Made by a program: the position numbers and the translations under genes
Virus record (IMG/VR): IMGVR_UViG_3300043446_004613
Location: 62,001 to 126,000 of that record
DNA: 64,000 nt
Direction: 5' to 3' (one strand)
Part shown: piece after piece, positions 1-63,635 of the stretch
Layout of the letters: each line of letters starts with the position of its first letter
Position numbering within the stretch: the stretch's first letter is position 1
The notes under the pieces: generated by a model
What the model saw: the letters and a program-made list of their open reading frames with translations, nothing else
The model's database searches: none
Told to the model about the DNA's origin: nothing

Positions 1-155
1 TTGCTTCCGAGATAGTTGTACAGCGCCTGTAGCACATTATCCGGGCGATCATCACGATCCAGCGCCTGTTTGAGCGCAAGGTACTGTGGCGTCCAAATAC
101 CTGTTGGATTTGTCGGGCCGGACAAATCGCTAAAATTGGCAGCAAAAGCTTTCAT
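1..155 (-). CDS. hypothetical protein, 3' end outside the window
   Basis: Manual translation MKAFAANFSDLSGPTNPTGIWTPQYLALKQALDRDD... stays open to the window edge; TAGTTA motif 6 nt upstream. Confidence 0.5.
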   Translation of the reverse strand, partial: MKAFAANFSDLSGPTNPTGIWTPQYLALKQALDRDDRPDNVLQALYNYLGS

Positions 156-164
156 CTGGTGTAA

Positions 165-353
165 CTACCAGTTCAGCGCATCTTCGTACTTGCGCATCAA
201 CTGCTCGATATAGCCGCGTTCATCGTCAGTGTAATGCTCCTTGTCGAGGCTTTTAGCTATAAATTGCTGTTCAGATTCGGTCAACTCAAGCTCTGAGTCG
301 GAGAGCTTTATCAAAAAGTTGCCGCGAATCTGGTCGGTGTCGTAGTAGCTCAT
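165..353 (-). CDS. hypothetical protein (62 aa)
   Basis: ORF start overlaps the upstream stop; acidic helical composition. Confidence 0.6.
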   Translation of the reverse strand: MSYYDTDQIRGNFLIKLSDSELELTESEQQFIAKSLDKEHYTDDERGYIEQLMRKYEDALNW

Positions 354-868
354 TTTCGGATACTGCCGCTAATGTAGGACTTCAAGCCCGGTTTTTGGCG
401 AACGTACATCTGATCTGTCACTGGCCGCCAGACCCGCAACTTAAAGCGGTGCTCAACCCGATTCCACATATCATCAAAAGGCGGCGTGCTGGCAGGATCG
501 GTGTACTGCTTCGCCCATTCAGTCATGCGCCCGCGTGCGTAAGGTGAAACCCACATGGCGTGTGTACCCCATGATCCGGTTGGCCCGCAGCGACAAAGCA
601 CGCCGATGTACACAAGATCGTGATCGTGACAGTGCTTCAGTGGGGCTAGAAAGTTATCGGCAACAATCAGGCAGTCATCCTCGAAAACAAGAACGTCTTC
701 GTCTGGAGCTAGGCTATTGTAGATGCCGAAATGACTGCGGCGACAGCCTTCCCGGCCATCATCCATCATCACGGCAGGCCAGATTTGAGCGTTCGCACGT
801 TGCACCAGTTGCTGCACCATGTCGGAACGCTCAGTACACTTAGTATCGTGTATAACGTACGTTTTCAC
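350..868 (-). CDS. glycosyltransferase family 25-like protein
   Basis: VIH...R N-terminus, EGCRRSH and VLVFEDD motifs typical of GT25. Confidence 0.65.
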   Translation of the reverse strand: MKTYVIHDTKCTERSDMVQQLVQRANAQIWPAVMMDDGREGCRRSHFGIYNSLAPDEDVLVFEDDCLIVADNFLAPLKHCHDHDLVYIGVLCRCGPTGSWGTHAMWVSPYARGRMTEWAKQYTDPASTPPFDDMWNRVEHRFKLRVWRPVTDQMYVRQKPGLKSYISGSIRK

Positions 869-889
869 AGGGTCTTCGATGTGACGTCG

Positions 890-1204
890 TCAAGACCAGT
901 CAATAACGCACGGGCCGATGGCGTATACAGCCACTTTAGCTTTACGCTCTTGCGCGTCTGCGATGTAGGCAAACACGTCGGCGGATTTAAGCACAACACA
1001 CACCGGCTCATCACCCGGCGCAATACCTGTGTAGTCTTTGGCTATAAATCCGTTGGCTTCGCACATGCGCCAACGTGAAAGATCAGCGGCGGCGGCACTC
1101 AGTTTATTTTCAGTTTCTTTGTTCATGTTTGATAGAACAGCATCTGGTTGATTTATTTCGTGCTTGTCAATGATTGACGTCAGGTTGAGCCATGAACGCG
1201 GCAC
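890..1204 (-). CDS. hypothetical protein (start may be at 1126)
   Basis: ORF in co-directional gene run. Confidence 0.5.
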   Translation of the reverse strand: MPRSWLNLTSIIDKHEINQPDAVLSNMNKETENKLSAAAADLSRWRMCEANGFIAKDYTGIAPGDEPVCVVLKSADVFAYIADAQERKAKVAVYAIGPCVIDWS

Positions 1205-1311
1205 CCTCGGCAGTTTTCATCCAGCGATCTAACCGGCTAAAATAGACCGGCACTTTCAACGGACGCTGAGGACGCTTAACTTTACGAAAAAATTCGCGCT
1301 CTGTTAGAGGT

Positions 1312-2406
1312 TTACGCTTGCGGGACATTTTCCACCTCCGGGGCGTTGATCAAGACCGGTTCGATCCAAGTCAAACGTTTTGGTGACGCATCGTTCCAAG
1401 GCTTCGGGCCGAAGGGTTGATTACGCATGTGGCCGCGCCGCCAGTGCATGCGAGGAGATGCGTGAGCGCCGGGTGCTCCTGAACTTTCGACACGCTGCGC
1501 CTTGTAGTCCCAACCGATGCAGTTCGGCTGCCAAAGTGCTTCCTGTTCAATCGCACCTTTACGGTTGCGCTTTTCCGGGCGCTGCAAGGCTCCAAGCTTG
1601 ATGACATGAGGCCGGGCAGTCATGGCCAACAACAGCTTGATCGCAAACATCTGAACTTTTGCGTTGAACTGCTTATCTTCGGCGTCGGTCGGAAAGCCGT
1701 CACGGCATGCGTTTAGCGTATCCGGTGAAAGTTGCTCTTCAAGATACGTTGCATCTTCAAACGGAGCGCTATCCATGTCGCGGATGTTCATGTGCGTCGG
1801 AAAACTTCCGACATAGTCCATAGGAATAGCGCCGTCGTTTCCAACCACGATACTGACAATATTGATGCGCTCTGACTGGTTATCGATCTTGTTGAGCGCG
1901 TCCAGCGGGATGTCACAGGCAGGCATGTTTTTAAGGCACTGCGGATAAATGCCGATCGGACTGCGCGTAACGCTGATAAATGGCACGGCATAGCCAAAGT
2001 ACTTTACGGAGAAGTCGACCGGTAGCACGAAGGTCATGGCTGGTAATGGCCACTTAATCTGGTCAAGAACGAAGTCGTCTGGTGGTTCCGTCTGGATTAC
2101 GGCTTGAGCAAACTCACTCTGCACAAAATAAGTCGGAACGCGATACTGCATCTGCATCAGGCTATTGATCAGGCCGGTGACATGCGGAATCATGTGCAGT
2201 TCAGCCTTAAAGCCAGTGAGCAACTCGCTAAGTAAGCTGGCTGCATAGTATTTAGGATTGAGATACTTGTCGCTTGGCGGCTGGATACGTTTTGGGTAAA
2301 GCGCTTTGAATGTATTAGGCTGATCTTTGAGCAGCCCTTTAAGGACGGTATCAAGTATTGATTTTGTATTCACGTTCAAGATCATAAGTGAGCATCGTAA
2401 GGGCAA
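1312..2406 (-). CDS. conserved phage hypothetical protein with C-terminal HxRRGHxR motif
   Basis: HASPRMHWRRGHMRNQPFGP...LTWIEP motif seen in many phage proteins of unknown function. Confidence 0.7.
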   Translation of the reverse strand: MPLRCSLMILNVNTKSILDTVLKGLLKDQPNTFKALYPKRIQPPSDKYLNPKYYAASLLSELLTGFKAELHMIPHVTGLINSLMQMQYRVPTYFVQSEFAQAVIQTEPPDDFVLDQIKWPLPAMTFVLPVDFSVKYFGYAVPFISVTRSPIGIYPQCLKNMPACDIPLDALNKIDNQSERINIVSIVVGNDGAIPMDYVGSFPTHMNIRDMDSAPFEDATYLEEQLSPDTLNACRDGFPTDAEDKQFNAKVQMFAIKLLLAMTARPHVIKLGALQRPEKRNRKGAIEQEALWQPNCIGWDYKAQRVESSGAPGAHASPRMHWRRGHMRNQPFGPKPWNDASPKRLTWIEPVLINAPEVENVPQA

Positions 2407-2440
2407 ACATGTTCGCTGTCAACATCAATATTTAACATAA

Positions 2441-3680: not shown

Positions 3681-3892
3681 ATCGTCCATAAATACGGTTG
3701 CCAGTCCAGACTGGCGTGGAACCACTGTCCCGGTTCTGGCGAGAGGTTCTCTCCCTCTGTCAACTCTGCTTGTTCTAAGGCGTTGAGTTTTACCAAATGG
3801 TGGCTGACTAATCTCTTCGATTAACAGCGTGCAGCCAAAGCGCTTCAACTGCACGCCTGTCCAGAATTGTACCAAACCATCAGCCGTTAAAA

Positions 3893-4014: not shown

Positions 4015-4043
4015 ACTGTATACACGTTATTGCTTATCGTCAA
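4015..4043 (-). promoter_or_regulatory. sigma70-type promoter for the tRNA-like RNA
   Basis: TTGACG-17 nt-TACAGT ending 8 nt before the RNA 5' end. Confidence 0.75.
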
Positions 4044-4443
4044 CAGCAGCTTTTAACAAAGTTTCGTCAGGGCAGAGCATAACGGCGGCCTGTTGGTAAA
4101 TCTGACCTTCCAGTTCGTTACCGTCGGCAAAAAATTTACCGGCCATCTCCGAGGCTTTGATCCAAGCGTCTTTTCCGTGTTGAATTTCCAGCTGGCGACA
4201 GACCAGTGATGGTCGCCACAAGCGCTCTACCGGGCGTACGCTGCCGCAGTCGAGGAATACCTGAATACCGGTCAGGATAAACAGCGCACTGTTGGCTGCC
4301 TCTGCCGGATCAGCACCTTCACTAGCCATCAACAAGGCCAGCATGTTGGCTAATTTCTCGTTCTCGCCGCCTTCCTTTAGCGGCAGCAACTGAATCGGTT
4401 CAGGTTTTGCTTCGGGCGATGGTGTTGGTTGTGGAGTATCCAT
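4027..4443 (-). CDS. hypothetical protein (138 aa)
   Basis: ORF in operon run. Confidence 0.6.
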   Translation of the reverse strand: MDTPQPTPSPEAKPEPIQLLPLKEGGENEKLANMLALLMASEGADPAEAANSALFILTGIQVFLDCGSVRPVERLWRPSLVCRQLEIQHGKDAWIKASEMAGKFFADGNELEGQIYQQAAVMLCPDETLLKAAVDDKQ

Positions 4444-6971: not shown

Positions 6972-7002
6972 ACAGTTCTAAGAACCGTATTTATTACACA
7001 TT

Positions 7003-12438: not shown

Positions 12439-12451
12439 ACGTTAAATACGA

Positions 12452-16623: not shown

Positions 16624-17031
16624 ATGGCAGATTTCATGTATCCGAGCATAAAAGAAAAGATGCTATCAGGTCAGTTTAACTGGCTTTCTGACAGCATCGT
16701 AGCGATTCTCGTCGCTTCCGGCAAGTATACACCGTCGGTAAATCACGCCTCTTTGCTCGATTTACCAGTGACTGCGCGGGTCGCCACGTCGGATGTGCTT
16801 ACCGGTCGCACCGTTGTAAATAATGTTGTTGACGCAGACGACTACCTCTTCTCTAACGTGTCAGGCCCGCAGGTTGCAGCCGTCGTTCTCGCTGTCAACA
16901 GCGGCACAGAGGCTACCTCATGGTTGATTGCTTATCTGGATAAGGGTGTCAGCGGGCTGCCGTTTAATCCGTCAGATGGCCCGGCCCAGCTGGCTTGGGA
17001 TAACGGAGCTAATAAGATTTTTGCCCTGTAG
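16624..17031 (+). CDS. putative virion (tail/baseplate-associated) protein
   Basis: FMYP...NW..D...LIAYLD...GLP...WDNG.NKIFAL pattern seen in phage structural genes; upstream of baseplate gene. Confidence 0.6.
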   Translation: MADFMYPSIKEKMLSGQFNWLSDSIVAILVASGKYTPSVNHASLLDLPVTARVATSDVLTGRTVVNNVVDADDYLFSNVSGPQVAAVVLAVNSGTEATSWLIAYLDKGVSGLPFNPSDGPAQLAWDNGANKIFAL

Positions 17032-17038
17032 TTATTGC

Positions 17039-17306: not shown

Positions 17307-17534
17307 ATGGCTATAAATTTCAAGGCTCATGCCGAAAACTTACGCACGCTGGCTGATGGAGCGTCTAGGCTCGATCGGCAGAACTGCAACAATCTGCACT
17401 TAGTGGCCGATGTTCTAAACCGCATCGATCACCTTAAACAACAGCTTACGAACTGTAATGCGGACGATGATGACGACGTCACCCGCACAGCAAAAGAGCT
17501 TATGGCCGTGCTTGGAATCCAGCCCGGTAGTTAA
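17307..17534 (+). CDS. hypothetical protein
   Basis: ORF with GTTCTTA 5 nt upstream. Confidence 0.55.
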   Translation: MAINFKAHAENLRTLADGASRLDRQNCNNLHLVADVLNRIDHLKQQLTNCNADDDDDVTRTAKELMAVLGIQPGS

Positions 17535-21604: not shown

Positions 21605-22429
21605 GTGAATATCGAAACCCTTAAAGACCTGCTGGCCGTTCCAACGCTCAGCTACAAAGAACACGCGTTAGTGAACTGGCTGGTTCACTACATCACACAC
21701 AACATTCCCGGCTGCACCGTTACAATCGATCCCTATCGTAACGTGTACGTGCGCAAAGGTACGGCTAAACAGGCACCCTGCATCGGAGCGCACATCGACA
21801 GCGTCCAGCCGCTGCGCAAAGTCAAAATCGTACAGGAAGGTACGCGTATTATCGGTTATGCCGATAAAAATCGTCAAGTTGGTATCGGCGGTGATGACAA
21901 GGCGGGCGTTTTCGTGTGCCTTAACCTGCTTGAGCGCTTCAGTGACATCAGCGTGATCTTTTTCGCTACCGAGGAGTGCGGTTGCGTCGGCGCACGTAAT
22001 GTAGACCCTGAGTTTATTGCCGGAGTGGGATACTTGATCGAATACGACTGCCCCAGCCGTAACATGTTATCGTATTCCGTTGGCGGTACCCGCCTGTTCC
22101 AGAACCGGGGTGACTTTATTCAGACAGCTTTTCCTGTCCTTATGCGCCACGGCACCCAGCTATGGCAACGGCATCCGTACACCGATGTCATGGCCATCCG
22201 CCGGTTATTTCCGATCTCGTGCCTGAATCTGTCCTGTGGCTACTACAACTGGCACGCAGATAACGAGTTTGTCAGCCTGCCTGATGTTGACTTGGCCATC
22301 GCACAGGGCGAGGAGTTGATCGCTACACTGGGAAGTAAGGCATACCCTTGCCCGATCGACTTAGCGTTTGATACGGATGCGCCATTGACGCCGATTACAA
22401 GTCTGCACGTGCCAGACCCGCTATCGTAG
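21605..22429 (+). CDS. M28/M20-type zinc peptidase-like protein
   Basis: HIDSV, GGDDKAG, TEECG, EYD, WHADNE metal-ligand motifs; GTG start inferred. Confidence 0.8.
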   Translation: MNIETLKDLLAVPTLSYKEHALVNWLVHYITHNIPGCTVTIDPYRNVYVRKGTAKQAPCIGAHIDSVQPLRKVKIVQEGTRIIGYADKNRQVGIGGDDKAGVFVCLNLLERFSDISVIFFATEECGCVGARNVDPEFIAGVGYLIEYDCPSRNMLSYSVGGTRLFQNRGDFIQTAFPVLMRHGTQLWQRHPYTDVMAIRRLFPISCLNLSCGYYNWHADNEFVSLPDVDLAIAQGEELIATLGSKAYPCPIDLAFDTDAPLTPITSLHVPDPLS

Positions 22430-22441
22430 TTAAGGCTGCAC

Positions 22442-23290
22442 ATGTTTGAAGCTGCGTGGGTCATAAATAAATTCTGCAACATGGAGTGCTCGTACTGCAA
22501 CGCGCACAACGTGACGAAGCAACAGCAGATACCAGTCGACAGAATACTACGCTTTTTCAACAGTAAAGGGCGCAAGTGGCACATCAATATTGCGGGCGGT
22601 GAACCGTTTCTGTACCCGAAATTCAATGACCTATTGCACCGGCTTTGTGAAAACCACGAAGTCAGTATCATCACTAATCTGGATACGCCGCCCGTTCTTG
22701 ACTTCATTCAGACGCCACCTAAAAGCGTTCGGTACGTGATGGCCTCCCTGCATCTAGGCCAAAATCGGCGTCTGTCTGTGGATGAGTTTTGCGCCCGGAT
22801 AAAAGCTCTCAACCAAAAAGGTATTCACACGTTTGCGACGCAGGTCATCACACCAGAGGTATTCGATGCGTTTGACGGTGTGCTGAACGAATTCATATCC
22901 AAACACGGACTGGTGGTAGCCCCCAAGTGTCTGCGGGGTCTGCACGCTGGCAGTGTATATCCGGCAGCGTACACAACAGAACAAAGAGAAAAATTCTTGG
23001 AGTGGAGCCTGCTTGCGCAGCAAAGCCATAACGGGCAGCTGCACGATATGTCTGTTGATCGGGCATTTATCCACGGACGCGCTCCGTTTTTAGGCAAGCA
23101 CTGTCGGGCAGGTACGGACTTCATCCGCATACATGCAAGCGGCAAGATCACACGCTGCGGCGACAGTAACACTGTGATCGGAAACCTTTTGACGGGTGAG
23201 CTTCACCTAAAGGCGGAGCCTGCGCTGTGCGATATAAAAGACGCCTGTCCGTATTTTTGTTACCGGCACTCTTTACTGACAGCGCCGTAG
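22442..23290 (+). CDS. radical SAM protein with C-terminal Cys-rich (SPASM/twitch-like) domain
   Basis: CNMECSYC, GGEPF, C-terminal CRAG...RC...CD...C...C. Confidence 0.85.
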   Translation: MFEAAWVINKFCNMECSYCNAHNVTKQQQIPVDRILRFFNSKGRKWHINIAGGEPFLYPKFNDLLHRLCENHEVSIITNLDTPPVLDFIQTPPKSVRYVMASLHLGQNRRLSVDEFCARIKALNQKGIHTFATQVITPEVFDAFDGVLNEFISKHGLVVAPKCLRGLHAGSVYPAAYTTEQREKFLEWSLLAQQSHNGQLHDMSVDRAFIHGRAPFLGKHCRAGTDFIRIHASGKITRCGDSNTVIGNLLTGELHLKAEPALCDIKDACPYFCYRHSLLTAP

Positions 23291-23297
23291 TTAACAC

Positions 23298-24980: not shown

Positions 24981-25145
24981 CTAATTACCGTAGTATTCAA
25001 TCTCAAGCAGTTGGGCGACGAGCGAAGCGTCAGCTTGCCTGTCTTGGCGCGTGCGCCGGTCTGCCCACTTATGCTTGTGTGGTTTGCACATGGCGCAGCT
25101 ACAGCCCGGCTTGTTGGATAACTTTCGTTTAAGACGATTGTTCAT
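24981..25145 (-). CDS. small basic Cys/His protein (54 aa; not in ORF track)
   Basis: MNNRLKRKLSNKPGCSCAMCKPHKHKWADRRTRQDRQADASLVAQLLEIEYYGN; ATGA overlap with upstream gene. Confidence 0.65.
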   Translation of the reverse strand: MNNRLKRKLSNKPGCSCAMCKPHKHKWADRRTRQDRQADASLVAQLLEIEYYGN

Positions 25146-25556: not shown

Positions 25557-25570
25557 TAACTACGTAGTTA
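25557..25570. promoter_or_regulatory. palindromic bidirectional motif TAACTACGTAGTTA between divergent genes
   Basis: Perfect 14-bp palindrome made of two back-to-back TAGTTA motifs; recurs at 41661. Confidence 0.7.
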
Positions 25571-27667: not shown

Positions 27668-27701
27668 TGCTTTAACTACGGCTCGGCGTTGTATTTAGTG
27701 C

Positions 27702-31983: not shown

Positions 31984-32002
31984 GCTATCCTTAAATACGT
32001 GG

Positions 32003-35380: not shown

Positions 35381-35410
35381 CGAATCAAAAGAACGGTGTT
35401 CTTAAAAAAT

Positions 35411-36481
35411 ATGGAACGTGAATCACAAAGTATACCGCTACCATGCTTCGGCATGGAGCATAATAGCAGCGATCCGCAGTGTTTAAGCTGTAAGCATGAA
35501 GCCGATTGCCGCATATTCATGGGTGCTCGCGCAGATAAAGTGACGCTGGATCAGGTAAAGTTCGACTTGATCTCAGACAAGTACCCAAAAGAAATATTTA
35601 ATGTTGACGACCCTGACAAGGTGCGACTGCAAACACTATACTGTAATTGTTACGCTACGGTATTTGACGGAGTAGTCCCCGATAAAAACGACAATGCTGA
35701 GCGCTTTAGTGCAAAGATATTAGCCAACGCCAACGCTGCTGATTGTTCACTTCGCATGTTCATGCTGTCAAACATGATAGCTCACGAGACACACGAAAAA
35801 CAGGTTATCAAGCATACGGAGAAACTGCGAGCGTCACGCTTTACGGCACGTTCGCTCACAAGCGCGTACGCCATAAAACGGGCGCAGATGTATCAACAGA
35901 TGTGCCGTGACCGCTTTGGCGTATTCAGTGTTAAAAGCTTGGCGGCATTGTCGGATGATAAGGAAACCATGACCGACACTGAACAGCTGATGCTGCAAAA
36001 TGAAGTCATGGCCGGTACGTGGATGGTGCGCCACAAGATATTTAACAGCGGCCCGAGCGAAAGACTGATGTTTGACACCCTTGAATTCCAACTGAGCCAT
36101 GAATGGTTGGCACTGGAATCATCTTACACGCGCTACGTGCTCACGCCGATGCGCCTCGGCGAGCTTAAAAGCACCAAGGTACAGGAGTATCGGCGCAAAG
36201 AAGTACTCGACCTTATCGGTTTTTTGAAGCGTAACCCGAGCAAAGGCCGCTGGTATTGGACGACGCGTCAGGCTATCATGGCAAAAGCTGTGACGCAGGT
36301 GCTCGCAAAATTTAATCTGCAACCGTGCGATTTCATGTATAGTCGCGAACCTGTCACAGACGTGATGAGTTTTTGGCGCACGCTGGGCCTGACAGTCCGG
36401 CACTACCACTGCCTGTTGTACCTGAACGGCGAAAACAATTTATTTACGCCGCGTCACCTTCGCTGGGAACACCGTTCTTAA
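35411..36481 (+). CDS. hypothetical protein with N-terminal Cys cluster, replication-associated
   Basis: PCFG...DPQCLSCKHEADC; directly upstream of helicase. Confidence 0.7.
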   Translation: MERESQSIPLPCFGMEHNSSDPQCLSCKHEADCRIFMGARADKVTLDQVKFDLISDKYPKEIFNVDDPDKVRLQTLYCNCYATVFDGVVPDKNDNAERFSAKILANANAADCSLRMFMLSNMIAHETHEKQVIKHTEKLRASRFTARSLTSAYAIKRAQMYQQMCRDRFGVFSVKSLAALSDDKETMTDTEQLMLQNEVMAGTWMVRHKIFNSGPSERLMFDTLEFQLSHEWLALESSYTRYVLTPMRLGELKSTKVQEYRRKEVLDLIGFLKRNPSKGRWYWTTRQAIMAKAVTQVLAKFNLQPCDFMYSREPVTDVMSFWRTLGLTVRHYHCLLYLNGENNLFTPRHLRWEHRS

Positions 36482-37968: not shown

Positions 37969-38045
37969 CGCGGGGTGGAGCAGCCCGGTAGCTCGTCTGG
38001 CTCATAACCAGAAGGTCGTTGGTTCAAATCCAACCTCCGCAACCA
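37969..38045 (+). tRNA. tRNA-fMet (CAT), initiator type
   Basis: Full cloverleaf, C1:A72 mismatch, anticodon loop CTCATAA, encoded CCA. Confidence 0.95.
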
Positions 38046-38915: not shown

Positions 38916-38922
38916 TGTAGTT

Positions 38923-39201
38923 ATGGGCATGGATTACGACCCGCTTGAAGTACAGAAAAATATCGACCACGCGAATAATCTGCGAGCGCGGATTAAGCAG
39001 TCGTTATCAAAGTCACCTGCACACACGGTTGTAAACCGGCTGTTGGACGAGCCTCTTCCGAAACATGGAGCACGCGGCACTCAGCGCAAAAAAGCCGCCA
39101 GCGCTCGATCGGCCCGCATGAGCACCAACCGTAACCTGCGTGCGCGGAGCTTTGGTCGCAACGACAACTACAGCGTCCGCGATCGCGGCTGGCCAACGTG
39201 A
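38923..39201 (+). CDS. basic hypothetical protein with internal VVNRLLDE
   Basis: ORF with TAGTTA motif at its start. Confidence 0.6.
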   Translation: MGMDYDPLEVQKNIDHANNLRARIKQSLSKSPAHTVVNRLLDEPLPKHGARGTQRKKAASARSARMSTNRNLRARSFGRNDNYSVRDRGWPT

Positions 39202-41660: not shown

Positions 41661-41676
41661 TTAACTACGTAGTTAA
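41661..41676. promoter_or_regulatory. palindromic bidirectional motif TTAACTACGTAGTTAA
   Basis: Perfect 16-bp palindrome between divergent genes; core identical to 25557-25570. Confidence 0.7.
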
Positions 41677-44764: not shown

Positions 44765-44775
44765 GTAGTTAAGGC

Positions 44776-46321: not shown

Positions 46322-46336
46322 GCTAGAAAGAACAAT

Positions 46337-46915
46337 ATGTCTAAAGTCATTTGTGTTGGTAATCCTAAAACAGCAACAACAAGTTTACAGCGGGCTATGG
46401 AATTGCTTGGTTACTCTGTAATGGGTTGGAATGACTACGCTGTGCAGTCTTGGATTTCTGGGCAAGATGAGTTGTGCCTGAGCTTGGCAAAACCATACGG
46501 ATTTTTGAAGGATTGGCCTTGGCGCACGTACTACAGAGTGTTTGATAAAGCATATCCCGGCAGTAAGTTTATCCTTACTACGCGAAATGTAGACGCTTGG
46601 GTTGACAGCTTGATTCGCCATCTAGCCTACCATAAATCGACACCTTGGGCAGAACAAGCTCGTATCAAAGGTTATGGCTTTGACCCCCGTAAGCACGTCA
46701 ACGACAAAGCGTTTCTCATCGACTACTACGAGGCAAAAAACGCCGAAATAAGAAACTACTTTATCTCCAGACCTGATGACCTTCTGGAGCATGACTTTAC
46801 GATTGATCCAACATGGGAAGCGCTATGCGGTTTTCTCAAGAAACCGGTTCCATTAAAAGCGTTTCCAAAATTAAACGTAAATCCGCTTAAAAGTGAAAAT
46901 GTTCAACGTACTTAG
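46337..46915 (+). CDS. sulfotransferase-family protein 1
   Basis: VICVGNPKTATTSL (5'-PSB loop), DWPW, KFILTTR..DAW..S, WEALCGFL. Confidence 0.82.
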   Translation: MSKVICVGNPKTATTSLQRAMELLGYSVMGWNDYAVQSWISGQDELCLSLAKPYGFLKDWPWRTYYRVFDKAYPGSKFILTTRNVDAWVDSLIRHLAYHKSTPWAEQARIKGYGFDPRKHVNDKAFLIDYYEAKNAEIRNYFISRPDDLLEHDFTIDPTWEALCGFLKKPVPLKAFPKLNVNPLKSENVQRT

Positions 46916-48910: not shown

Positions 48911-48938
48911 TTGACGCTTGGCTTATCGTGTATACACT
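48911..48938 (+). promoter_or_regulatory. sigma70-type early promoter, predicted leaderless transcript
   Basis: TTGACG-16 nt-TACACT with AT-rich UP region; ATG 6 nt after the -10 box. Confidence 0.65.
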
Positions 48939-50704: not shown

Positions 50705-50712
50705 GTTGTTAA

Positions 50713-50865
50713 CTACATGCGCGGGCGCACCCTCTTAAAAGGATAGCCCTCTATGCTTGTGCTGGTTTTGCCGCAAGGGCACGTGAAACGGAATTTCTTC
50801 GCGTCCCAGAGCAACGTCGGAGAACCGCAGCAAGCTGTCGGTTGTTTTAGCTCTTTTGGCTTCAC
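50713..50865 (-). CDS. small Cys-rich protein (50 aa; not in ORF track)
   Basis: MKPKELKQPTACCGSPTLLWDAKKFRFTCPCGKTS...; GTGA overlap with HU stop. Confidence 0.55.
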   Translation of the reverse strand: MKPKELKQPTACCGSPTLLWDAKKFRFTCPCGKTSTSIEGYPFKRVRPRM

Positions 50866-51485: not shown

Positions 51486-53003
51486 TTATTCAAAGGTTTC
51501 TTTGCTGTGCTGTTCAATCAATGCGATAAGCTCAGCCAGCGGAGTATTATCGCGGGGATACCACGTCTTTTGTTTACCCGTCAGCTTCTTTTTAAGCTCA
51601 TCGCTGGGTTCGCAAAAACGAAGTTTCATCGGAGCTTCACTGTCGAGACAGAACAGAAAACAACGTTTACGCTCCGCCCCTACGTAGTGATACCAAAACT
51701 GACGACCTTGGCGTTCAGCACGGTTAAATGTCTCATCGAGGTGACTGATGATTTCTGCCTCATCGTTGCTGGTAATCCGCTGACTGGGTTCGTTGGTAGG
51801 CCGGGGCAGGTAGGCAGGCGTGCGCTGCTGGCGGGCACCCAGCAGCTTAGGGCTGATTGCCATCTTTGATAGCCCAAGATTTGCGGCTTCGACAGAGCAG
51901 GAGTGACGCAAGTCACAGGTGTTGCATTGGCGAGCGTTCTTGGAGTACAGGATGCCATAGCAGGCGAGTTTTCCGTTTCCGATCGAACGCGGAACCTTGG
52001 CGTTAACCTCAGTCAACATCTCGGCAACTTGTGGCGACACCTTGTCAAATTGATCACGGGCCGCCATCGTGAGCATGCGGCGTACGACCATACCGTCAAG
52101 GTCAGTTGGAATCTGTAGTCCGAAGACAAGTTTAAGCTGTGCGATGATTGCGTTTTGACGGGCTTCGCCGTCGTGTTGTTCTTGAGTTACCATACGATGC
52201 GCTAGAGTTTTGTTACGTATTGATAGAACAGCTTCTGAAAATAGTTCGGTCGAAATTCCGACAGCTTCCGCCATGTGCGTGAATTTTATTTTTACCGTCA
52301 CCTTTCCCTTGTTGCCTTTGCGCATCGCGTCCAATTCGGCATAGCAGCGTGCGTGCGCACTAGGGCTAATTAGTTCGTGAAAAACAAGCTTCTCTACAGG
52401 CGTAAGTTGGAAAGCAAACTCAGCCGCTGTTTGGCTAAATCCCCAATCAATGTCGTTTTCGTCGCATCCACTGTCTACGTCGTGCATGTCCGGCACTTGC
52501 AGTCCCAAATCAGGGTCGTCAAGTGATAGGTCAACGTTCTTGTGATACTCTGGCGTTTCCTCGCTGTCATGCGCAGCTTTAGGCGCGTCTAGTTTTTGCT
52601 GTTGACGCGGCGGCGGTTTTTGACCAGTGCGCTTTTCCGTAAAGCGGTATTTCTGAACACGGCTTTTGGTGTTGTTGTTTACACTTGTCTTGAAAAAGGC
52701 AAAAAACGAGTGACGAGTCGGACACTTATCGCCGCCCATGATGCCCTTGCTGATAAGTTTGCTGAGCACAAGGTTGCCTTCACCCATCAGTTCGTCAAAC
52801 TGAAGGTGCGGCGTAGTCTCGTCGCGGTATTGGTTAGCCACAGTGGCGATGACACGCTGTAGATCAGGCATCATCTCTTCCAACACCGGAGGTCTAAGCT
52901 TCGGGTCTTTGAAGATTAGGAATAAACGTTGACGCTTTGGGCGCAGTGCGCCAAGGATGTCACTCGTTAGCCGAATCTTCGTTGAAAATGCTGTGCTCGC
53001 CAT
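51486..53003 (-). CDS. sigma-factor-like protein with C-terminal Zn-binding extension
   Basis: Region 2-like LQRVIATVANQY...FDELMGEGNLVL...FFAFFK; HTH-like MAEAVGIS; CYG...CNTC...C. Confidence 0.55.
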   Translation of the reverse strand: MASTAFSTKIRLTSDILGALRPKRQRLFLIFKDPKLRPPVLEEMMPDLQRVIATVANQYRDETTPHLQFDELMGEGNLVLSKLISKGIMGGDKCPTRHSFFAFFKTSVNNNTKSRVQKYRFTEKRTGQKPPPRQQQKLDAPKAAHDSEETPEYHKNVDLSLDDPDLGLQVPDMHDVDSGCDENDIDWGFSQTAAEFAFQLTPVEKLVFHELISPSAHARCYAELDAMRKGNKGKVTVKIKFTHMAEAVGISTELFSEAVLSIRNKTLAHRMVTQEQHDGEARQNAIIAQLKLVFGLQIPTDLDGMVVRRMLTMAARDQFDKVSPQVAEMLTEVNAKVPRSIGNGKLACYGILYSKNARQCNTCDLRHSCSVEAANLGLSKMAISPKLLGARQQRTPAYLPRPTNEPSQRITSNDEAEIISHLDETFNRAERQGRQFWYHYVGAERKRCFLFCLDSEAPMKLRFCEPSDELKKKLTGKQKTWYPRDNTPLAELIALIEQHSKETFE

Positions 53004-53970
53004 AACGCCGTGGGTCGATAGTCTCGATCATCTCGTTGTACGTTTCTTGTGCTGAACGTACAGTTTTCTTGTGTTTGCGGGCGACCTCTGCGATCGAATC
53101 AGGGTCTAAATCTGTCTTGTCGATGTCACGCATCAACAAGTAATCAGAATGGATTTTTGACAGCTGTTGGATGGTAGGAAACTTCATCCGTTTGCCTCCG
53201 AACAGCACGCACAGCTTTTTAGCAACTTCAAACCCGAACTCATCTACAATATCGGGCAGATACGTGTAGCTTTGAGAAGCCAGCACAAGATCGTATTCTG
53301 TAAACGGGACGTAAGTTTGTTTATAGAAGGCTTGGCGCAAATTCACGATTGACCAGTCGTAAAAGAATTTGGATAAGTCGAAACTGATACCGTAGGCATA
53401 AGCTGCGCTGCGAATTGCGTCCTGCTTATCGTGCTCGTCGTCTATGATACACTGGATCAAGAAGCGGATAGCGCCAATCTCCTGTGGATCGCCCCATCGA
53501 CAGTTTAGCTCTCTAAGCTTGTTGTGCGTTTCCTGTACGGCATCGTGCTTGTCGACTTCGTGATCATCAACGCCGTAAAACTTTTCAAGGTTATCGCTGG
53601 TGACGTGGAATCGACGCCGGTACTGATTTACTTTCTGTAGTTCAGAACGAAAAGCGTTTTTAGCGCATTTGCTAAACCAAGAAAACAACTTGCCCTTTTT
53701 AGGCTGCCACGCTGCCAGCCACTTGATGACTTTTTCCTGTGCAGCGCTGACCAGTTGTGGAAGATCGACCGTGTAATGAAAATCTTCAAACTGCGCTAAA
53801 CGCTCAAACATCGCCGAGGAGCCGACGACAATGTTTTCAAGCACGAGCATCGCATCTTTGTGGCGACCAGCCGCGTTCAGCTGCTTCCACTGGATAGCCA
53901 GCGGCGTCAGTTGACTTGCCGGAAATATATGCTCTCCGTCAGCGGGTGTTGCTGGATTCTTCTTTGGCAT
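52960..53970 (-). CDS. sigma region 2-like domain fused to Mor-like activator domain
   Basis: WQPKKGKLFSWFSKCAKNAF; LPDIVDEFGFEVAKKLCVLFGG.RMKFP; C-terminal HTH. Confidence 0.6.
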   Translation of the reverse strand: MPKKNPATPADGEHIFPASQLTPLAIQWKQLNAAGRHKDAMLVLENIVVGSSAMFERLAQFEDFHYTVDLPQLVSAAQEKVIKWLAAWQPKKGKLFSWFSKCAKNAFRSELQKVNQYRRRFHVTSDNLEKFYGVDDHEVDKHDAVQETHNKLRELNCRWGDPQEIGAIRFLIQCIIDDEHDKQDAIRSAAYAYGISFDLSKFFYDWSIVNLRQAFYKQTYVPFTEYDLVLASQSYTYLPDIVDEFGFEVAKKLCVLFGGKRMKFPTIQQLSKIHSDYLLMRDIDKTDLDPDSIAEVARKHKKTVRSAQETYNEMIETIDPRRYGEHSIFNEDSANE

Positions 53971-60069: not shown

Positions 60070-60090
60070 GCGTTGTAAAAGAACAGGGTT

Positions 60091-61626: not shown

Positions 61627-61652
61627 AGTCTGTTCTGTAGAACAGAAAACTT

Positions 61653-61925
61653 ATGGACGCCAAACTGGATAGTGAACTTAAAATGACCCGGATACGCGGC
61701 GCGGCTTTGACTTTGCGCGTTCAGCCGGTAATGGTCATGTCTGAGATGCTGAGTGAGTACATTCAGCTTTGCGATGCTCAGCAACGTCAGATCGCTGACT
61801 TATGCGCCATAATTGCCAAATATGAAGCTAATCAAACAAATGATCCAGCAGTACCAAGCCAAGCACAACCGCCTGCCGCTGCAAGTCCTTGTACACCCGG
61901 TAGCACTGACAGCCCTCGCACTTAA
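61653..61925 (+). CDS. small coiled-coil hypothetical protein
   Basis: ORF; 3' third overlaps the next gene. Confidence 0.5.
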   Translation: MDAKLDSELKMTRIRGAALTLRVQPVMVMSEMLSEYIQLCDAQQRQIADLCAIIAKYEANQTNDPAVPSQAQPPAAASPCTPGSTDSPRT

Positions 61926-62055
61926 AAAGTCTGCCCTGCCGATGTGTGATGGCGTACCAATCGTGTGTCGTGAGGTTACAGTGGCACCTGCTGTAGACAG
62001 TCTTCGCCTTGGTATAACCGTAATCGACGGAGCCATCCGTACTTTTGACATCTAA
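61822..62055 (+). CDS. hypothetical protein
   Basis: MKLIKQMIQQYQAKHNRLP... Confidence 0.55.
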   Translation: MKLIKQMIQQYQAKHNRLPLQVLVHPVALTALALKKSALPMCDGVPIVCREVTVAPAVDSLRLGITVIDGAIRTFDI

Positions 62056-62980
62056 TTTTATGCGTAGCCTAATTGCAATCAAAACCTATCGCCGACTCCA
62101 CGCCCTCAAAGCTATGATGTCGGGCATCGAACAACACTGTCCGCAGTATCACTGCATTATCAGCGAAGACTGCGGTCAGCGTGATGGAACGACAGATTTC
62201 ATTACTAAAGGCCGTGTCGGCACAGCTGTGCCGGAACTGCTGTCGACAAAGCATGTCGTTGAAAGCGGCGACGCTAACTTCATTAACGCAGATGTATACA
62301 CTGGAGACGTAAATCTGGGTGTTACAGGCAACAACAACCGTTTGCTCAAGCTGTTCATGGATGGCGAGTGGGATCACCTGCTGCTGTGCGATGACGATTT
62401 GCTCGTGACGGGTGATTTCGTTGAAGCATACGCGAACGCCCATGCAGACCTTGGTGTGGACATGTTTTGCTTCTGCGACTTCACTGAAGCATCTCCAGCC
62501 ATATCCGGTGCCCCGGAAACGTATAAATGGACTACTTATCCGATGCGCGGTTATCAAGTAAAGTTTCTACCCCGCTTCACCGGCATCATGATGTCGGTAA
62601 CACGCAGCCTCATTGAAAAGATAGGCTACATGGATGCCGAGTTCGGCAAGTTTGGAGAAGAACACTGCGACTGGACAATTCGTGCGCGTATGGCAGGCGG
62701 CATACGTCTGAACAACACGGATATGAATTGTTTGGACATCGCCCATAACCGCCTGACCCATCAAAACGTACAGACCAGTATGTCAGGTTCAGCGCGTAAG
62801 CACGCTGATCAAGAAGCCCACGTCGCTATGCAGCGGGCTGCCTATGAATACCGTTTGCGTCACTATTACCGGCCCTTCCGTCTTACCTATCCAGTGATGG
62901 CGGCAGGCCATTCCGGTGTCGGCGTGCCCTGCCGCCAGCTGGATCAGATCGGCTATAGACTCGTGAACGCCCCTGCGTAG
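62045..62980 (+). CDS. GT2-family glycosyltransferase
   Basis: IISED, LGVTGNNN, LLCDDD, IGYMD..FG.FG.EH.DW..R. Confidence 0.8.
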   Translation: MTSNFMRSLIAIKTYRRLHALKAMMSGIEQHCPQYHCIISEDCGQRDGTTDFITKGRVGTAVPELLSTKHVVESGDANFINADVYTGDVNLGVTGNNNRLLKLFMDGEWDHLLLCDDDLLVTGDFVEAYANAHADLGVDMFCFCDFTEASPAISGAPETYKWTTYPMRGYQVKFLPRFTGIMMSVTRSLIEKIGYMDAEFGKFGEEHCDWTIRARMAGGIRLNNTDMNCLDIAHNRLTHQNVQTSMSGSARKHADQEAHVAMQRAAYEYRLRHYYRPFRLTYPVMAAGHSGVGVPCRQLDQIGYRLVNAPA

Positions 62981-62987
62981 TTAGGCT

Positions 62988-63635
62988 GTGACTAAGAATC
63001 CGCATCTGAAGAAATTACTCGGCGAATCGGAACACGACGAGGTTCACCGCTACGCCGATGCTATGCAGCAAACGCCGCAGAACGGACGCGAAGCATACCC
63101 AGATCAGCCTGAGCTTGCCTCTGCGTTTGATCGGCTGCATTTGCAGGATAAGTCGTTGGACGAACTGCGCGACATGGTTGCCAATCAAGCGCTAAACGGC
63201 TTTGAGCTTGAGGTCGTAAACAACGAGATCGAGTTTTTGAGCGGACTCTCTGAAAATCTCGAAGATCAGCAGAATATGCCCGCACGTCCAAAAGACGAGA
63301 CGCAGGACGACACGCCGATCAAGCCGAAAAGTAACAAGGCGGCCAGCTTCGGAAACGTCAACGTGGAACTGGCTCCGAGCGTGCGGGAATTGATCGGTCT
63401 TTGGAAGCGCGGCGAGCACATGGCAGTTGCCGCCCGCTTGATGTTCACGCCAGCGAGCTATGTCGATTTCATTGCGTTATCTTTTACCATTGGTCAAGCT
63501 GGTGCAATGGAATTGGCTGGTTTACTGGATGAACTTTCAGATACCGAAAATATGCGACCGCCGTCCACCCCGCCAGAGTACAAAGAATTGCTTCAAAAAG
63601 TCGCAGGAGCAAACGCAGAGGAAAACGTTATATGA
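62988..63635 (+). CDS. acidic hypothetical protein with KKLLGE leader
   Basis: GTG start 4 nt after TAGTTA; MTKNPHLKKLLGESE. Confidence 0.7.
   Translation: MTKNPHLKKLLGESEHDEVHRYADAMQQTPQNGREAYPDQPELASAFDRLHLQDKSLDELRDMVANQALNGFELEVVNNEIEFLSGLSENLEDQQNMPARPKDETQDDTPIKPKSNKAASFGNVNVELAPSVRELIGLWKRGEHMAVAARLMFTPASYVDFIALSFTIGQAGAMELAGLLDELSDTENMRPPSTPPEYKELLQKVAGANAEENVI

What the first reader, a model, noticed from the sequence alone, without database searches (positions are those of the whole stretch)
155..62990. GTANTTA motif 4-9 nt upstream of about 22 start codons: candidate phage late promoter giving near-leaderless mRNAs
Seen: TAGTTA, TATTTA, TACTTA or TAATTA, nearly always preceded by G, lies at a tight spacing before starts on both strands: 155, 2441, 3680, 7003, 12438, 14395, 17039, 17538, 22442, 23298, 24977, 25552, 25577, 27667, 27702, 31983, 38929, 41685, 44776, 46919, 50704, 62988. 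The modal spacer is 4 nt and these starts mostly lack a Shine-Dalgarno. Targets include baseplate, neck and most LLE-leader genes. Knowledge: T4-like late genes use a -10-only promoter (TATAAATA) read by gp55. Inference: this is a different -10-only late promoter whose +1 is at or next to the start codon.
Basis: partly seen in the sequence, partly recalled or inferred. Interest (0 to 1): 0.8.

Follow-up and report, generated by a model that had tools for sequence, protein, structure and literature searches.

The report
Phage promoter word abutting start codons
A short DNA word, (C)GTAGTTA, sits 4-9 bases before about a quarter of the genes of an uncultured T4-like jumbo phage and its relatives, and most likely acts as a phage-specific promoter that makes messenger RNAs with almost no leader.

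Summary
GTAGTTA occurs 16 times in the window against 4.5 expected. GTANTTA is followed within 3-10 nt by an ORF start at 21 of 30 sites, versus about 10% for permuted control words. In 320 kb of related genomes 52 of 60 GTAGTTA copies are start-coupled.

Orthologous genes at 33-75% protein identity keep the heptamer while the flanking sequence diverges. Upstream stop codons explain at most 7 of 22 sites.

I read it as the -10-like core of a phage-specific, probably late, promoter whose start site is the 5th base after the heptamer. A pyrimidine-purine step is anchored there even when the start codon lies further away.

Two more classes share the same layout. One is GTTCTT, before replication genes. 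The other is ordinary TTGAC-N16/17-TAnnnT promoters whose -10 box ends about 6 nt before the ATG, or 5 nt before a tRNA. The capsid gene lacks the word, and there is no Shine-Dalgarno usage.

A conserved sigma-70-fold protein and an initiator tRNA are encoded nearby.

No RNA data exist, so the start sites and the "late" label are inferred. Verdict: new variant of a known kind, of moderately high interest.

The parts
162..168 (-). class-1 heptamer GTAGTTA, 6 nt before ATG at 155
   Evidence: its TAG is also the stop of the upstream gene
2429..2434 (+). weak class-1 variant TATTTA (no G), 6 nt before ATG at 2441
3689..3695 (-). class-1 GTATTTA, 8 nt before ATG at 3680
6987..6993 (+). class-1 GTATTTA, 9 nt before ATG at 7003; orthologs carry GTAGTTA
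12443..12449 (-). class-1 GTATTTA, 4 nt before ATG at 12438; kept in L003 and L004
14404..14410 (-). class-1 GTAGTTA, 8 nt before ATG at 14395; kept in all four relatives
17028..17034 (+). class-1 GTAGTTA, 4 nt before ATG at 17039
17527..17533 (+). class-1 GTAGTTA, 4 nt before ATG at 17538 (baseplate wedge); kept in 3 of 4 relatives
22426..22432 (+). class-1 GTAGTTA, 9 nt before ATG at 22442 (radical SAM protein)
23287..23293 (+). class-1 GTAGTTA, 4 nt before GTG at 23298
24982..24988 (-). class-1 GTAATTA, 4 nt before ATG at 24977 (LLE-leader protein)
25557..25570 (.). back-to-back palindrome TAACTACGTAGTTA. The minus arm is 4 nt before ATG at 25552 and the plus arm 6 nt before ATG at 25577 (tubulin-like). 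The whole divergent intergenic region is 24 nt.
27673..27679 (-). class-1 GTAGTTA, 5 nt before ATG at 27667
27691..27697 (+). class-1 GTATTTA, 4 nt before GTG at 27702
31992..31998 (-). class-1 GTATTTA, 8 nt before ATG at 31983; orthologs carry GTATTTA or GTACTTA
38917..38923 (+). class-1 GTAGTTA, 5 nt before ATG at 38929
41662..41675 (.). second palindrome TAACTACGTAGTTA. The plus arm is 9 nt before ATG at 41685. The minus arm is 45-63 nt upstream of the likely start (41616 or 41598) of the divergent gene.
44765..44771 (+). class-1 GTAGTTA, 4 nt before ATG at 44776 (head-tail adaptor/neck)
46908..46914 (+). class-1 GTACTTA, 4 nt before ATG at 46919
50710..50716 (-). class-1 GTAGTTA, 5 nt before ATG at 50704
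62977..62983 (+). class-1 GTAGTTA, 4 nt before GTG at 62988. It heads a co-directional run that continues past the window to the prohead protease, the Gp23 capsid gene and a strong terminator.
35389..35403 (.). class-2 palindrome AAGAACGGTGTTCTT between divergent PolA (ATG at 35380, minus) and the gene starting at 35411 (plus)
36474..36479 (+). class-2 GTTCTT, 9 nt before ATG at 36489 (DnaB-like helicase); kept in L009
6980..6985 (-). class-2 GTTCTT, 8 nt before ATG at 6971 (RusA); kept in L002
37935..37963 (+). sigma-70-type promoter TTGACT-N17-TACAGT, ending 5 nt before the first base of the tRNA
2394..2422 (-). sigma-70-type promoter TTGACA-N17-TACGAT, ending 8 nt before ATG at 2385 (AcrVA2-like gene)
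48911..48938 (+). sigma-70-type promoter TTGACG-N16-TACACT, ending 6 nt before ATG at 48945
52960..53970 (-). candidate specificity factor: a 336-aa protein with a sigma-70-family fold
51486..53003 (-). adjacent conserved 505-aa protein, a possible second transcription factor (evidence weak)
37969..38045 (+). initiator-type tRNA-Met (C1xA72 mismatch), possibly supporting leaderless translation
   Evidence: PMC9031893

Best explanation
The heptamer (C)GTA(G)TTA is the core recognition element of a phage-specific promoter class. It is compact and -10-like, with no -35 partner. I infer that a bacterial-type RNA polymerase carrying a phage-encoded specificity factor binds it. The best candidate for that factor is the conserved sigma-70-fold protein at 52960-53970(-). 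I also infer that transcription starts at the purine 5 nt downstream of the heptamer, which would then occupy -11 to -5. In about half the sites that purine is the A or G of the start codon itself, so the mRNA has no leader. In the rest the leader is 1-5 nt, which explains why no Shine-Dalgarno sequence is present. This class heads the units that encode virion proteins (baseplate, neck, the capsid operon, protease-processed LLE-leader proteins) plus a few others, so it is most likely the late class. It is one of three classes built on the same plan. The second is GTTCTT, in front of replication and recombination genes. The third is canonical TTGAC-N16/17-TAnnnT, in front of an anti-defence-like gene, a tRNA and others. 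What is shown: motif enrichment, positional coupling, conservation across orthologs, the anchored Y-R step, the parallel placement of canonical promoters, and the sigma fold. What is inferred: the TSS position, the timing, and which factor reads which class.
For: Enrichment and coupling to starts. In 320 kb of non-redundant clade sequence 52 of 60 copies are coupled, against a mean of 3.2 and a maximum of 19 for permuted words. With the window genome excluded, GTAGTTA is still the top upstream word, 30 of 38 copies, p = 4e-39. Phylogenetic footprint: orthologs keep both the heptamer and its class while flanks diverge, and spacers vary from 4 to 13 nt. There is no upstream conserved element. 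Anchored initiator: in spacer-4 sites the base before the start is a pyrimidine in 38 of 38 cases, against 65% in controls (Fisher p = 4e-7). In spacer >=6 sites Y-R sits at +4/+5 in 18 of 30, against 2-7 at other offsets. Internal calibration: TTGAC-N16/17-TAnnnT promoters end 5-8 nt before an ATG or the tRNA 5' end. This holds for 4 of 5 in the window (ORF coupling in shuffles averages 0.13) and for 15 of 28 in relatives, 11 of them at exactly 6 nt. The heptamer is not a general translation signal: the Gp23 capsid and protease genes lack it and sit downstream in a class-1-headed run that ends at a strong terminator. About half of all genes lack any motif. The minus arm at 41668 lies 45-63 nt from its gene start. 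Heads of divergent units carry a motif in 16 of 22 cases, against 18 of 41 for tight internal genes. Divergent pairs with only 24-30 nt between starts leave no other intergenic room for promoters. Sigma-70 consensus promoters are depleted relative to shuffles. Trans factor: a conserved 336-aa protein whose top 50 Foldseek PDB hits are all sigma factors and whose BFVD hits are phage sigma factors at probabilities up to 1.0. An initiator tRNA is encoded nearby, and extra fMet-tRNA strongly enhances leaderless translation (PMC9031893). Antisense orphan copies are weakly depleted, 2 against about 6 expected.
Against: There is no RNA evidence: no RNA run was listed and only metagenomic DNA runs hold the sequence. 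The spacer from heptamer to start is the same range used by ribosome-binding sites. Under the proposed +1 the heptamer sits 1-2 bp closer to the start site than a canonical -10 hexamer, and it lacks the canonical A at -11. The sigma-fold matches have weak E-values (0.0014-0.4) and low TM-scores, and sequence searches against PDB found nothing. A full-length sigma would normally also read a -35 element, and none is seen. Class 1 also precedes non-structural genes (tubulin, radical SAM), so 'late' is not clean. Six divergent head genes have no recognised motif. Only about 84 kb of the 211-kb genome was inspected, so a phage-encoded RNA polymerase cannot be excluded.
Confidence: 0.65

Rival explanations
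1. RNA-level processing site. A phage or host endoribonuclease recognises GUAGUUA in polycistronic transcripts and cuts about 4 nt downstream, producing monocistronic, near-leaderless mRNAs. The word would mark mature 5' ends without being a promoter.
For: The position relative to starts and the anchored Y-R step would fit a fixed cleavage point equally well. Many sites lie inside co-directional gene runs where read-through transcripts are expected, and 7 overlap the upstream stop codon. Sense-strand orphan copies are not depleted.
Against: Divergent gene pairs separated by 24-34 nt carry the word on both strands. The head genes of those units need a promoter, and there is no other intergenic room for one. 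Canonical two-box sigma-70 promoters occupy exactly the same position before other genes and before a tRNA, which makes a promoter reading more parsimonious. Two gene-class-specific words would require two nucleases. Antisense orphans are weakly depleted. No candidate nuclease was identified.
Confidence: 0.1
2. Translation signal. The word is a non-Shine-Dalgarno ribosome-recruitment element, or the operator of a translational regulator in the style of T4 RegA, acting on the mRNA just upstream of the start codon.
For: It lies 4-9 nt upstream of starts on the coding strand, the genome lacks SD sequences, and it occurs before internal genes of co-directional runs.
Against: GUAGUUA is not complementary to the anti-SD core CCUCC (read directly from the sequence; anti-SD sequence from established knowledge). 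The most heavily translated gene, the Gp23 capsid, lacks it, as does about half of all genes. Two different words are conserved gene by gene, which a general ribosome signal would not need. The Y-R step is anchored to the word and does not move with the start codon. The arm at 41668 is 45-63 nt from its start codon. In low-GC tubulin-bearing phages an analogous start-proximal word lies upstream of genuine SD sequences; that comparison is by analogy only.
Confidence: 0.1
3. Binding site of a DNA-binding regulator (activator, repressor or nucleoid-type protein) that overlaps promoters whose real recognition elements are something else.
For: The palindromic back-to-back copies (25557-25570, 41662-41675) and the AGAAC-N3-GTTCT inverted repeats of class 2 resemble dimeric operator sites. 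The sigma-like protein has a Mor-type HTH match in its C-terminal part.
Against: Most class-1 sites are single, strictly oriented with the gene, and lack a second half-site. No other conserved promoter element exists nearby that the regulator could be modulating. Sigma-70-type promoters are depleted overall.
Confidence: 0.1
4. Artefact of composition or of stop codons. TAG/TAA stops of upstream genes, together with AT-rich start contexts, create an apparent motif.
For: 7 of 22 sites use the internal TAG or TAA as the real upstream stop.
Against: 15 of 22 sites have no such stop. Permutation and shuffle controls are exceeded by a wide margin. Conservation holds across diverged orthologs. In about 35 low-GC related loci the same word is present but never start-coupled.
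Confidence: 0.01

Closest known systems
T4-type late promoters (TATAAATA read by gp55 with gp33 and the gp45 clamp)
   Same: A single compact element of about 8 bp near -10 with no -35 box, placed before virion genes of a phage with a T4-type capsid module (Gp23 and S77 protease). A phage-encoded sigma-like factor is present.
   Different: The consensus is unrelated and TATAAATA is absent from the window. The element abuts the start codon, so leaders are 0-5 nt, whereas T4 late mRNAs have SD-containing leaders (my knowledge). The candidate factor is a 336-aa protein that aligns over the full length of sigma-70-family factors, unlike gp55, which is a small protein resembling sigma region 2 only (gp55 description from my knowledge).
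Thermus phage phiYS40 middle/late transcription, and the '-10 region adjacent to ORF' pattern of Deinococcus-Thermus
   Same: Promoter -10 elements lie directly upstream of ORFs and give leaderless mRNAs. phiYS40 makes most of its middle and late transcripts leaderless and manipulates initiation factors (PMC3594737). A -10 motif alone is sufficient as a promoter in D. radiodurans (PMC12340547). In this phage the sigma-70-type class has exactly this layout.
   Different: Class 1 and class 2 are not TANNNT-like. Three distinct words partition the genes. The support for leaderless translation would come from a phage initiator tRNA rather than from an IF2/IF3 shift (inference). The phage is a T4-like jumbo phage from freshwater with an unknown host.
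Phage-encoded sigma cascades (SPO1 gp28 and gp33/34; phiEco32 / 7-11 sigma)
   Same: Successive gene classes are marked by different promoter words read by host core RNA polymerase with phage sigma factors (PMC8948821 for 7-11; SPO1 from my knowledge). A sigma-fold protein is conserved across the clade.
   Different: Those promoters are bipartite (-35 and -10) and are followed by leaders. Here no -35 is detectable, and assigning a factor to each class is untested.
Jumbo-phage non-virion RNA polymerase promoters (AR9 AACA-N6-T-A/G; phiKZ TATG)
   Same: A very short motif directly abuts or includes the TSS, there is no -35, and many copies are spread over a jumbo genome (PMC5312081).
   Different: AR9 5' UTRs are 26-491 nt (PMC5312081), so those mRNAs are not leaderless. 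No phage multisubunit RNA polymerase genes were seen in the roughly 84 kb inspected. The capsid module here is T4-type, not phiKZ-type.

Membership tests
T4-type late promoter (gp55-dependent) | Consensus TATAAATA | tested here: not met
   0 copies in the window; the consensus found is (C)GTAGTTA
T4-type late promoter (gp55-dependent) | -10-only architecture with no -35 element | tested here: met
   No information content upstream of position -1 of the heptamer in 37 aligned sites
T4-type late promoter (gp55-dependent) | gp55-family sigma encoded by the phage | tested here: inconclusive
   Weak PHROG hit to 'late sigma transcription factor', E = 0.003. The fold matches full-length sigma-70-family factors.
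T4-type late promoter (gp55-dependent) | gp33 co-activator and sliding-clamp dependence | not tested
   No gp33 or gp45 homolog was flagged in the window. The rest of the 211-kb genome was not inspected.
T4-type late promoter (gp55-dependent) | Located before late (virion) genes and active late in infection | tested here: inconclusive
   It precedes the baseplate, neck, capsid operon and LLE-leader genes, but also tubulin and radical SAM genes. Timing cannot be tested without RNA.
Leaderless-gene promoter (-10 element adjacent to the ORF) | Promoter element ends about 6 nt before the start codon, with no SD | tested here: met
   Spacers are 4-9 nt for class 1 and a modal 6 nt for class 2 and the sigma-70-type class. 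SD words are at chance level.
Leaderless-gene promoter (-10 element adjacent to the ORF) | TANNNT-type -10 sequence | tested here: not met
   Class 1 (CGTAGTTA) and class 2 (GTTCTT) do not fit TANNNT. Only the third class does.
Leaderless-gene promoter (-10 element adjacent to the ORF) | Mapped TSS coincides with the start codon | not testable with these tools
   No RNA run was listed. The only indirect support is the Y-R anchor.
Shine-Dalgarno / ribosome-binding site | Complementarity to the 16S rRNA 3' end (CCUCC) | tested here: not met
   GUAGUUA and GUUCUU have no complementarity to CCUCC (direct reading of the sequence)
Shine-Dalgarno / ribosome-binding site | Present before most genes, including the most highly expressed ones | tested here: not met
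   It is absent before the Gp23 capsid and protease genes and before about half of all genes
Sigma-70 family (for the protein at 52960-53970) | Sigma-2 / sigma-4 helical domain fold | tested here: met
   The AF2 model has pLDDT 76. The top 50 PDB hits are all sigma factors (E 0.014-0.4, prob up to 0.97). BFVD hits are phage sigma factors with prob up to 1.0. E-values are weak.
Sigma-70 family (for the protein at 52960-53970) | Significant sequence match to Sigma70_r2 / r4 profiles | tested here: not met
   Pfam gives only a sub-threshold Mor HTH match. PDB sequence and profile searches returned nothing.
phiKZ/AR9-type nvRNAP promoter | Phage-encoded multisubunit RNA polymerase | tested here: inconclusive
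   None was found among about 100 genes in the window plus 20 kb of flanks. About 127 kb of the contig was not seen.

The most novel reading that the evidence does not exclude
A whole clade of uncultured T4-like jumbo phages runs an almost entirely leaderless expression programme. It would use three temporally distinct promoter classes that all place +1 on the start codon: a host-type TTGAC/TAnnnT class, then GTTCTT, then CGTAGTTA. The two non-canonical words would be read by divergent phage sigma-like or MotA-like factors that accept G or T instead of the canonical A at -11. The phage would supply its own initiator tRNA to favour leaderless initiation over host SD-led mRNAs.
Probability: 0.3. 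Interest if true: 0.75.

Novelty: new variant of a known kind. Interest (0 to 1): 0.62.

Why it matters
If this is right, it gives a ready-made regulatory map of early, middle and late units for a widespread but uncultured clade of freshwater and soil jumbo phages. The sigma-like gene alone has 293 homologs, on contigs up to 245 kb. It would also extend the leaderless phage expression strategy, so far known mainly from Thermus phage phiYS40, to T4-like jumbo phages. It offers two new, very compact promoter words paired with candidate specificity factors that can be tested in vitro. The apparent tolerance of G or T at the position equivalent to -11 would interest researchers working on sigma-factor promoter melting. 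A phage-borne initiator tRNA linked to leaderless translation would be a new kind of translational takeover. On the practical side, the words improve start-codon and operon annotation in these genomes.

Tried and rejected
1. Near-identity search against GenBank phages found nothing. The best PolA protein match was only about 24% identical, to SPO1-like phages, so no annotated relative could be used.
2. RNA evidence: two run searches found only metagenomic DNA runs and no RNA run. Read laying was therefore not used, because DNA contigs cannot show a TSS.
4. The stop-codon explanation is rejected: 7 of 22 sites at most.
5. A -35 partner was searched for in the logo and none was found.
6. A non-coding gene behind the heptamer would have excluded a translational role, but the tRNA and tmRNA are not preceded by it. 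That search instead revealed the sigma-70-type class.
7. Low-GC tubulin-bearing phages were tested as possible orthologous context. Only tubulin is shared, so their GTGTAAT word is an analogy and not an ortholog.
8. More distant genomes bearing the sigma-like gene (56-58% identity) show no GTAGTTA usage and no clear replacement word in 20 kb. Co-variation of factor and motif therefore could not be established.
9. Sequence and profile searches of the sigma-like protein against PDB gave nothing. Only the fold comparison was informative.
10. The 505-aa neighbour gave only weak MotA-like and sigma-like leads.
11. The host could not be identified. The only lead is one 5.9-kb contig in a Verrucomicrobiota MAG.

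Full report
WHAT THE WINDOW IS
The 64-kb window (52% GC) corresponds to positions about 62001-126000 of a 211,113-bp IMG/VR contig from a freshwater metagenome. It is gene-dense, with about 80 genes that switch strand often. It encodes the following:
- a family A DNA polymerase, an NAD-dependent ligase, a DnaB-like helicase, a UvsX/RecA-like recombinase and a baseplate wedge protein
- a head-tail adaptor, RusA and MazG, and a tubulin/TubZ-like protein
- just past the right edge, a T4-type prohead protease (Peptidase_S77) and a Gp23-type major capsid protein

It is therefore a distant T4-like jumbo myovirus. There is no close relative in GenBank phages. IMG/VR holds several relatives at 60-80% protein identity with GC contents of 48-62%.

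CHECKING THE OBSERVATION
All 22 listed starts carry TA[N]TTA 4-9 nt upstream, and 21 of them are preceded by G. One extra site was missed, before the start at 20941.
- GTANTTA occurs 30 times on both strands. 21 copies are followed within 3-10 nt by the start of an ORF of at least 60 aa. That is the best of 420 same-composition permutations, whose pooled rate is 10%.
- GTAGTTA occurs 16 times against 4.5 +/- 2.3 in dinucleotide shuffles. It is the top 7-mer upstream of gene starts, p = 2e-19.
- The canonical T4 late box TATAAATA is absent.
- Shine-Dalgarno words are at about chance level before starts.

CONSERVATION
For orthologous genes in five related loci, the sequence upstream of the start has diverged completely, but the heptamer remains.
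- The gene starting at 14395 has GTAGTTA in three of four relatives, as in the window, and GTAATTA in the fourth.
- The baseplate wedge gene has it in three of four relatives.
- The gene at 7003 has GTATTTA here and GTAGTTA elsewhere.
- The spacer to the start varies from 4 to about 13 nt.

With the window genome excluded, GTAGTTA is again the top upstream word in the clade: 30 of 38 copies, p = 4e-39. In 320 kb of non-redundant clade sequence, 52 of 60 copies are start-coupled, against a mean of 3.2 and a maximum of 19 for permuted words.

There is a natural negative control. In about 35 low-GC loci that share only the tubulin gene, the same word occurs about 60 times and is never start-coupled. 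More distant genomes that still carry the sigma-like gene (56-58% identity) do not use the word. It is therefore specific to a sub-clade.

ANATOMY
The aligned sites give (C)GTA(G)TTA, with no information further upstream, so there is no -35-like box. Among 77 pooled start-coupled sites the spacers are 4 nt (38 sites), 5 (7), 6 (7), 7 (8), 8 (4) and 9 (9).

Two features point to a fixed event 5 nt after the heptamer:
- In all 38 spacer-4 sites the base before the start codon is C or T, against 65% pyrimidine at non-motif starts (Fisher p = 4e-7).
- In sites where the start codon is at least 6 nt away, a pyrimidine-purine step still sits at +4/+5 after the heptamer in 18 of 30 cases, against 2-7 at neighbouring offsets.

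A Y(-1)R(+1) step is the usual signature of a transcription start for multisubunit RNA polymerases (established knowledge). That would place the heptamer at -11 to -5 and give leaders of 0-5 nt.

TWO FURTHER CLASSES WITH THE SAME LAYOUT
An unbiased search also found GTTCTT, in the extended form A-N-N-C-N-GTTCTT-W, typically 6-9 nt before other starts, p = 6e-10.
- It precedes the PolA, DnaB-like helicase, RusA, a second helicase and glycosyltransferase genes. A GTTTTA variant precedes the sigma-like gene itself.
- The class is conserved gene by gene in the relatives.

The third class consists of canonical TTGAC(A/T/G)-N16/17-TAC-N-N-T promoters.
- They end 5-8 nt before an ATG or before the first base of a tRNA in 4 of 5 window cases. 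ORF coupling in shuffles averages 0.13 sites.
- In relatives, 15 of 28 matches are followed by a start, 11 of them at exactly 6 nt.
- For sigma-70 promoters the start site lies about 7 nt after the -10 hexamer (established knowledge), so these transcripts should begin at the start codon.

This serves as an internal calibration. In these genomes ordinary promoters are placed exactly where the two unusual words sit. Aligned on that +1, all three classes share T at -10 and T at -7 and differ at -11 (A, G or T). That last alignment is my inference.

PROMOTER OR SOMETHING ELSE
Against a general ribosome signal:
- The Gp23 capsid and prohead protease genes lack the word. They lie downstream in a co-directional run that starts at the class-1 site at 62977 and ends at a strong terminator.
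- About half of all genes have no motif.
- The minus arm of the palindrome at 41668 lies 45-63 nt from its gene's start.
- The Y-R step follows the word and does not move with the start codon.
- The word is not complementary to the anti-SD sequence.

For a promoter:
- Heads of divergent units carry a motif in 16 of 22 cases, against 18 of 41 for tightly packed internal genes.
- Divergent pairs are only 24-34 nt apart and are filled by back-to-back copies (TAACTACGTAGTTA, AAGAACGGTGTTCTT). This leaves no other intergenic room for promoters.
- Sigma-70 consensus promoters are depleted relative to shuffles.
- Antisense orphan copies are weakly depleted, 2 against about 6 expected, while sense orphans are not.

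An RNA-processing site remains possible, because it would also predict an anchored cleavage point. Only 5'-end chemistry can separate the two readings.

TIMING
Class 1 precedes the baseplate wedge gene, the neck/adaptor gene and the run leading to the protease and capsid genes. It also precedes, directly or one gene upstream, every protein with an N-terminal ...IVD(K/R)LLE leader. Those leaders look like substrates of the T4-type prohead protease. Class 2 precedes replication and recombination genes. The sigma-70-type class precedes an AcrVA2-like gene, a tRNA and a few others. This fits a late, middle and early ordering, but class 1 also precedes the tubulin-like and radical SAM genes, and no expression data exist.

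TRANS FACTORS
The protein at 52960-53970(-) has these properties:
- Weak PHROG hits to a gp55-type late sigma and to a Mor-type activator, and a sub-threshold Pfam Mor match.
- 293 homologs at 57-76% identity on contigs up to 245 kb, in conserved synteny.
- An AlphaFold model (pLDDT 76) that matches only sigma-70-family factors among the top 50 PDB hits, and phage sigma factors in BFVD with probabilities up to 1.0. E-values are weak and TM-scores low.
- No hits in sequence-only searches against PDB.

The adjacent conserved 505-aa protein has language-model neighbours with Sigma70_r2/r4 domains. Its top fold hit is a chain of the T4 sigma-appropriation complex, and the MotA C-terminal domain appears lower in the list. 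All of these are weak. Two factors for two unusual words is an attractive pairing but is untested. Only about 84 kb of the genome was inspected, so a phage RNA polymerase cannot be excluded.

SUPPORT FOR LEADERLESS TRANSLATION
The ORF-free gap at 37928-38929 holds a tmRNA and a tRNA-Met. The tRNA has the C1xA72 mismatch typical of bacterial initiator tRNA (the feature is established knowledge). Increased fMet-tRNA strongly enhances leaderless but not canonical translation (PMC9031893). Thermus phage phiYS40, whose middle and late mRNAs are mostly leaderless, manipulates IF2 and IF3 (PMC3594737). A -10 box adjacent to the ORF is a sufficient promoter in Deinococcus (PMC12340547).

COMPARISON WITH KNOWN SYSTEMS
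The element works like a T4 late promoter in being a single compact -10-region box for virion genes. It works like phiYS40 and Deinococcus-Thermus promoters in abutting the ORF and giving a leaderless mRNA. It is not a member of the TATAAATA/gp55 family by sequence, and classes 1 and 2 are not TANNNT boxes. AR9 and phiKZ late promoters are similarly short and abut the TSS, but they give long leaders and depend on phage RNA polymerases (PMC5312081). No paper in the held library describes GTAGTTA as a phage promoter.

VERDICT
The most likely reading, at about 0.65, is a new promoter word in a three-class, near-leaderless expression scheme of an uncultured T4-like jumbo-phage clade. That makes it a new variant of a known kind, of moderately high interest and directly testable.

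Noticed in passing
window, e.g. 35389-35403, 36474-36479, 6980-6985, 60079-60084, 46328-46333, 43315-43320, 43657-43662: A second start-proximal word, GTTCTT (extended form A-N-N-C-N-GTTCTT-W), lies 6-9 nt before replication and recombination genes (PolA, DnaB-like helicase, RusA, a second helicase) and some glycosyltransferase genes. It is conserved gene by gene in the relatives and often forms an AGAAC-N3-GTTCT inverted repeat.
   Followed up: yes
window 2394-2422(-), 4015-4043(-), 37935-37963(+), 48911-48938(+); also L185, L187 and relatives: Canonical TTGAC-N16/17-TAC-N-N-T promoters have a -10 box that ends 5-8 nt before an ATG or before the tRNA 5' end. In relatives the spacing is exactly 6 nt in 11 of 15 coupled cases. 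This implies leaderless transcripts from host-type promoters.
   Followed up: yes
window 37969-38045 (+): A phage-encoded tRNA-Met has the C1xA72 acceptor mismatch of bacterial initiator tRNA. It may be relevant to leaderless translation.
   Followed up: partly
window 38235-38652 (+): A phage-encoded tmRNA (Rfam RF00023, 127.5 bits) has a long, unusual tag peptide predicted by ARAGORN.
   Followed up: no
window 25577-26701 (+): A tubulin/TubZ-like (PhuZ-like) protein is encoded in a T4-like jumbo phage. IMG/VR holds 49 homologous loci, most of them in low-GC phages that share little else with this genome.
   Followed up: partly
loci L135-L177 (low-GC tubulin-bearing phages): These phages use a different start-proximal word, (A/G)GTGTAAT (p about 1e-39), 8-25 nt upstream of starts. 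Genuine Shine-Dalgarno sequences lie between it and the ATG when the spacer is long.
   Followed up: partly
window 4400-4984(-), 5045-5692(-), 58837-60069(-), 60091-61626(-), 62045-62980(+), 350-868(-): A cluster of heptose/LPS-type sugar genes: an HldE-like kinase/adenylyltransferase, a GT9 heptosyltransferase and several glycosyltransferases. An epimerase lies just outside the window (L185:19180-20127). Their purpose is unknown; host surface or DNA/virion glycosylation are possibilities.
   Followed up: no
window 1312-2385 (-): This gene has a precomputed Pfam hit to AcrVA2-like (PF26125), a possible anti-CRISPR. It sits behind the best sigma-70-type promoter in the window.
   Followed up: no
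window products of 13150-13515(-), 24492-24977(-), 25142-25552(-), 41685-42224(+), 47515-48867(+): These proteins share an N-terminal ...(I/V)V(D/N)(K/R)(L/M)LE leader. They are probably cleaved by the T4-type prohead protease encoded at L185:12497-14191.
   Followed up: partly
window 51486-53003 (-): A conserved 505-aa protein next to the sigma-like gene. It has weak fold similarity to a chain of the T4 sigma-appropriation complex and to the MotA C-terminal domain. Its language-model neighbours carry Sigma70_r2/r4 domains.
   Followed up: partly
window 7003-8247 and 8249-9487 (+): These are tandem paralogous genes. Both match the same single gene in relatives L002, L003 and L004 (61% and 36% identity in L002). 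Only the first carries the class-1 heptamer.
   Followed up: no
locus L189 (JBEKZM010000197.1): The only hit to the sigma-like profile in the GTDB species-representative genomes is a 5.9-kb contig binned in a Verrucomicrobiota MAG. This is a weak host hint or a mis-binned phage fragment.
   Followed up: no
window 50337-50366: A strong bidirectional terminator-like hairpin (13 pairs, flanked by A and T runs) lies between convergent genes. Another strong terminator follows the capsid gene at about L185:15715.
   Followed up: no
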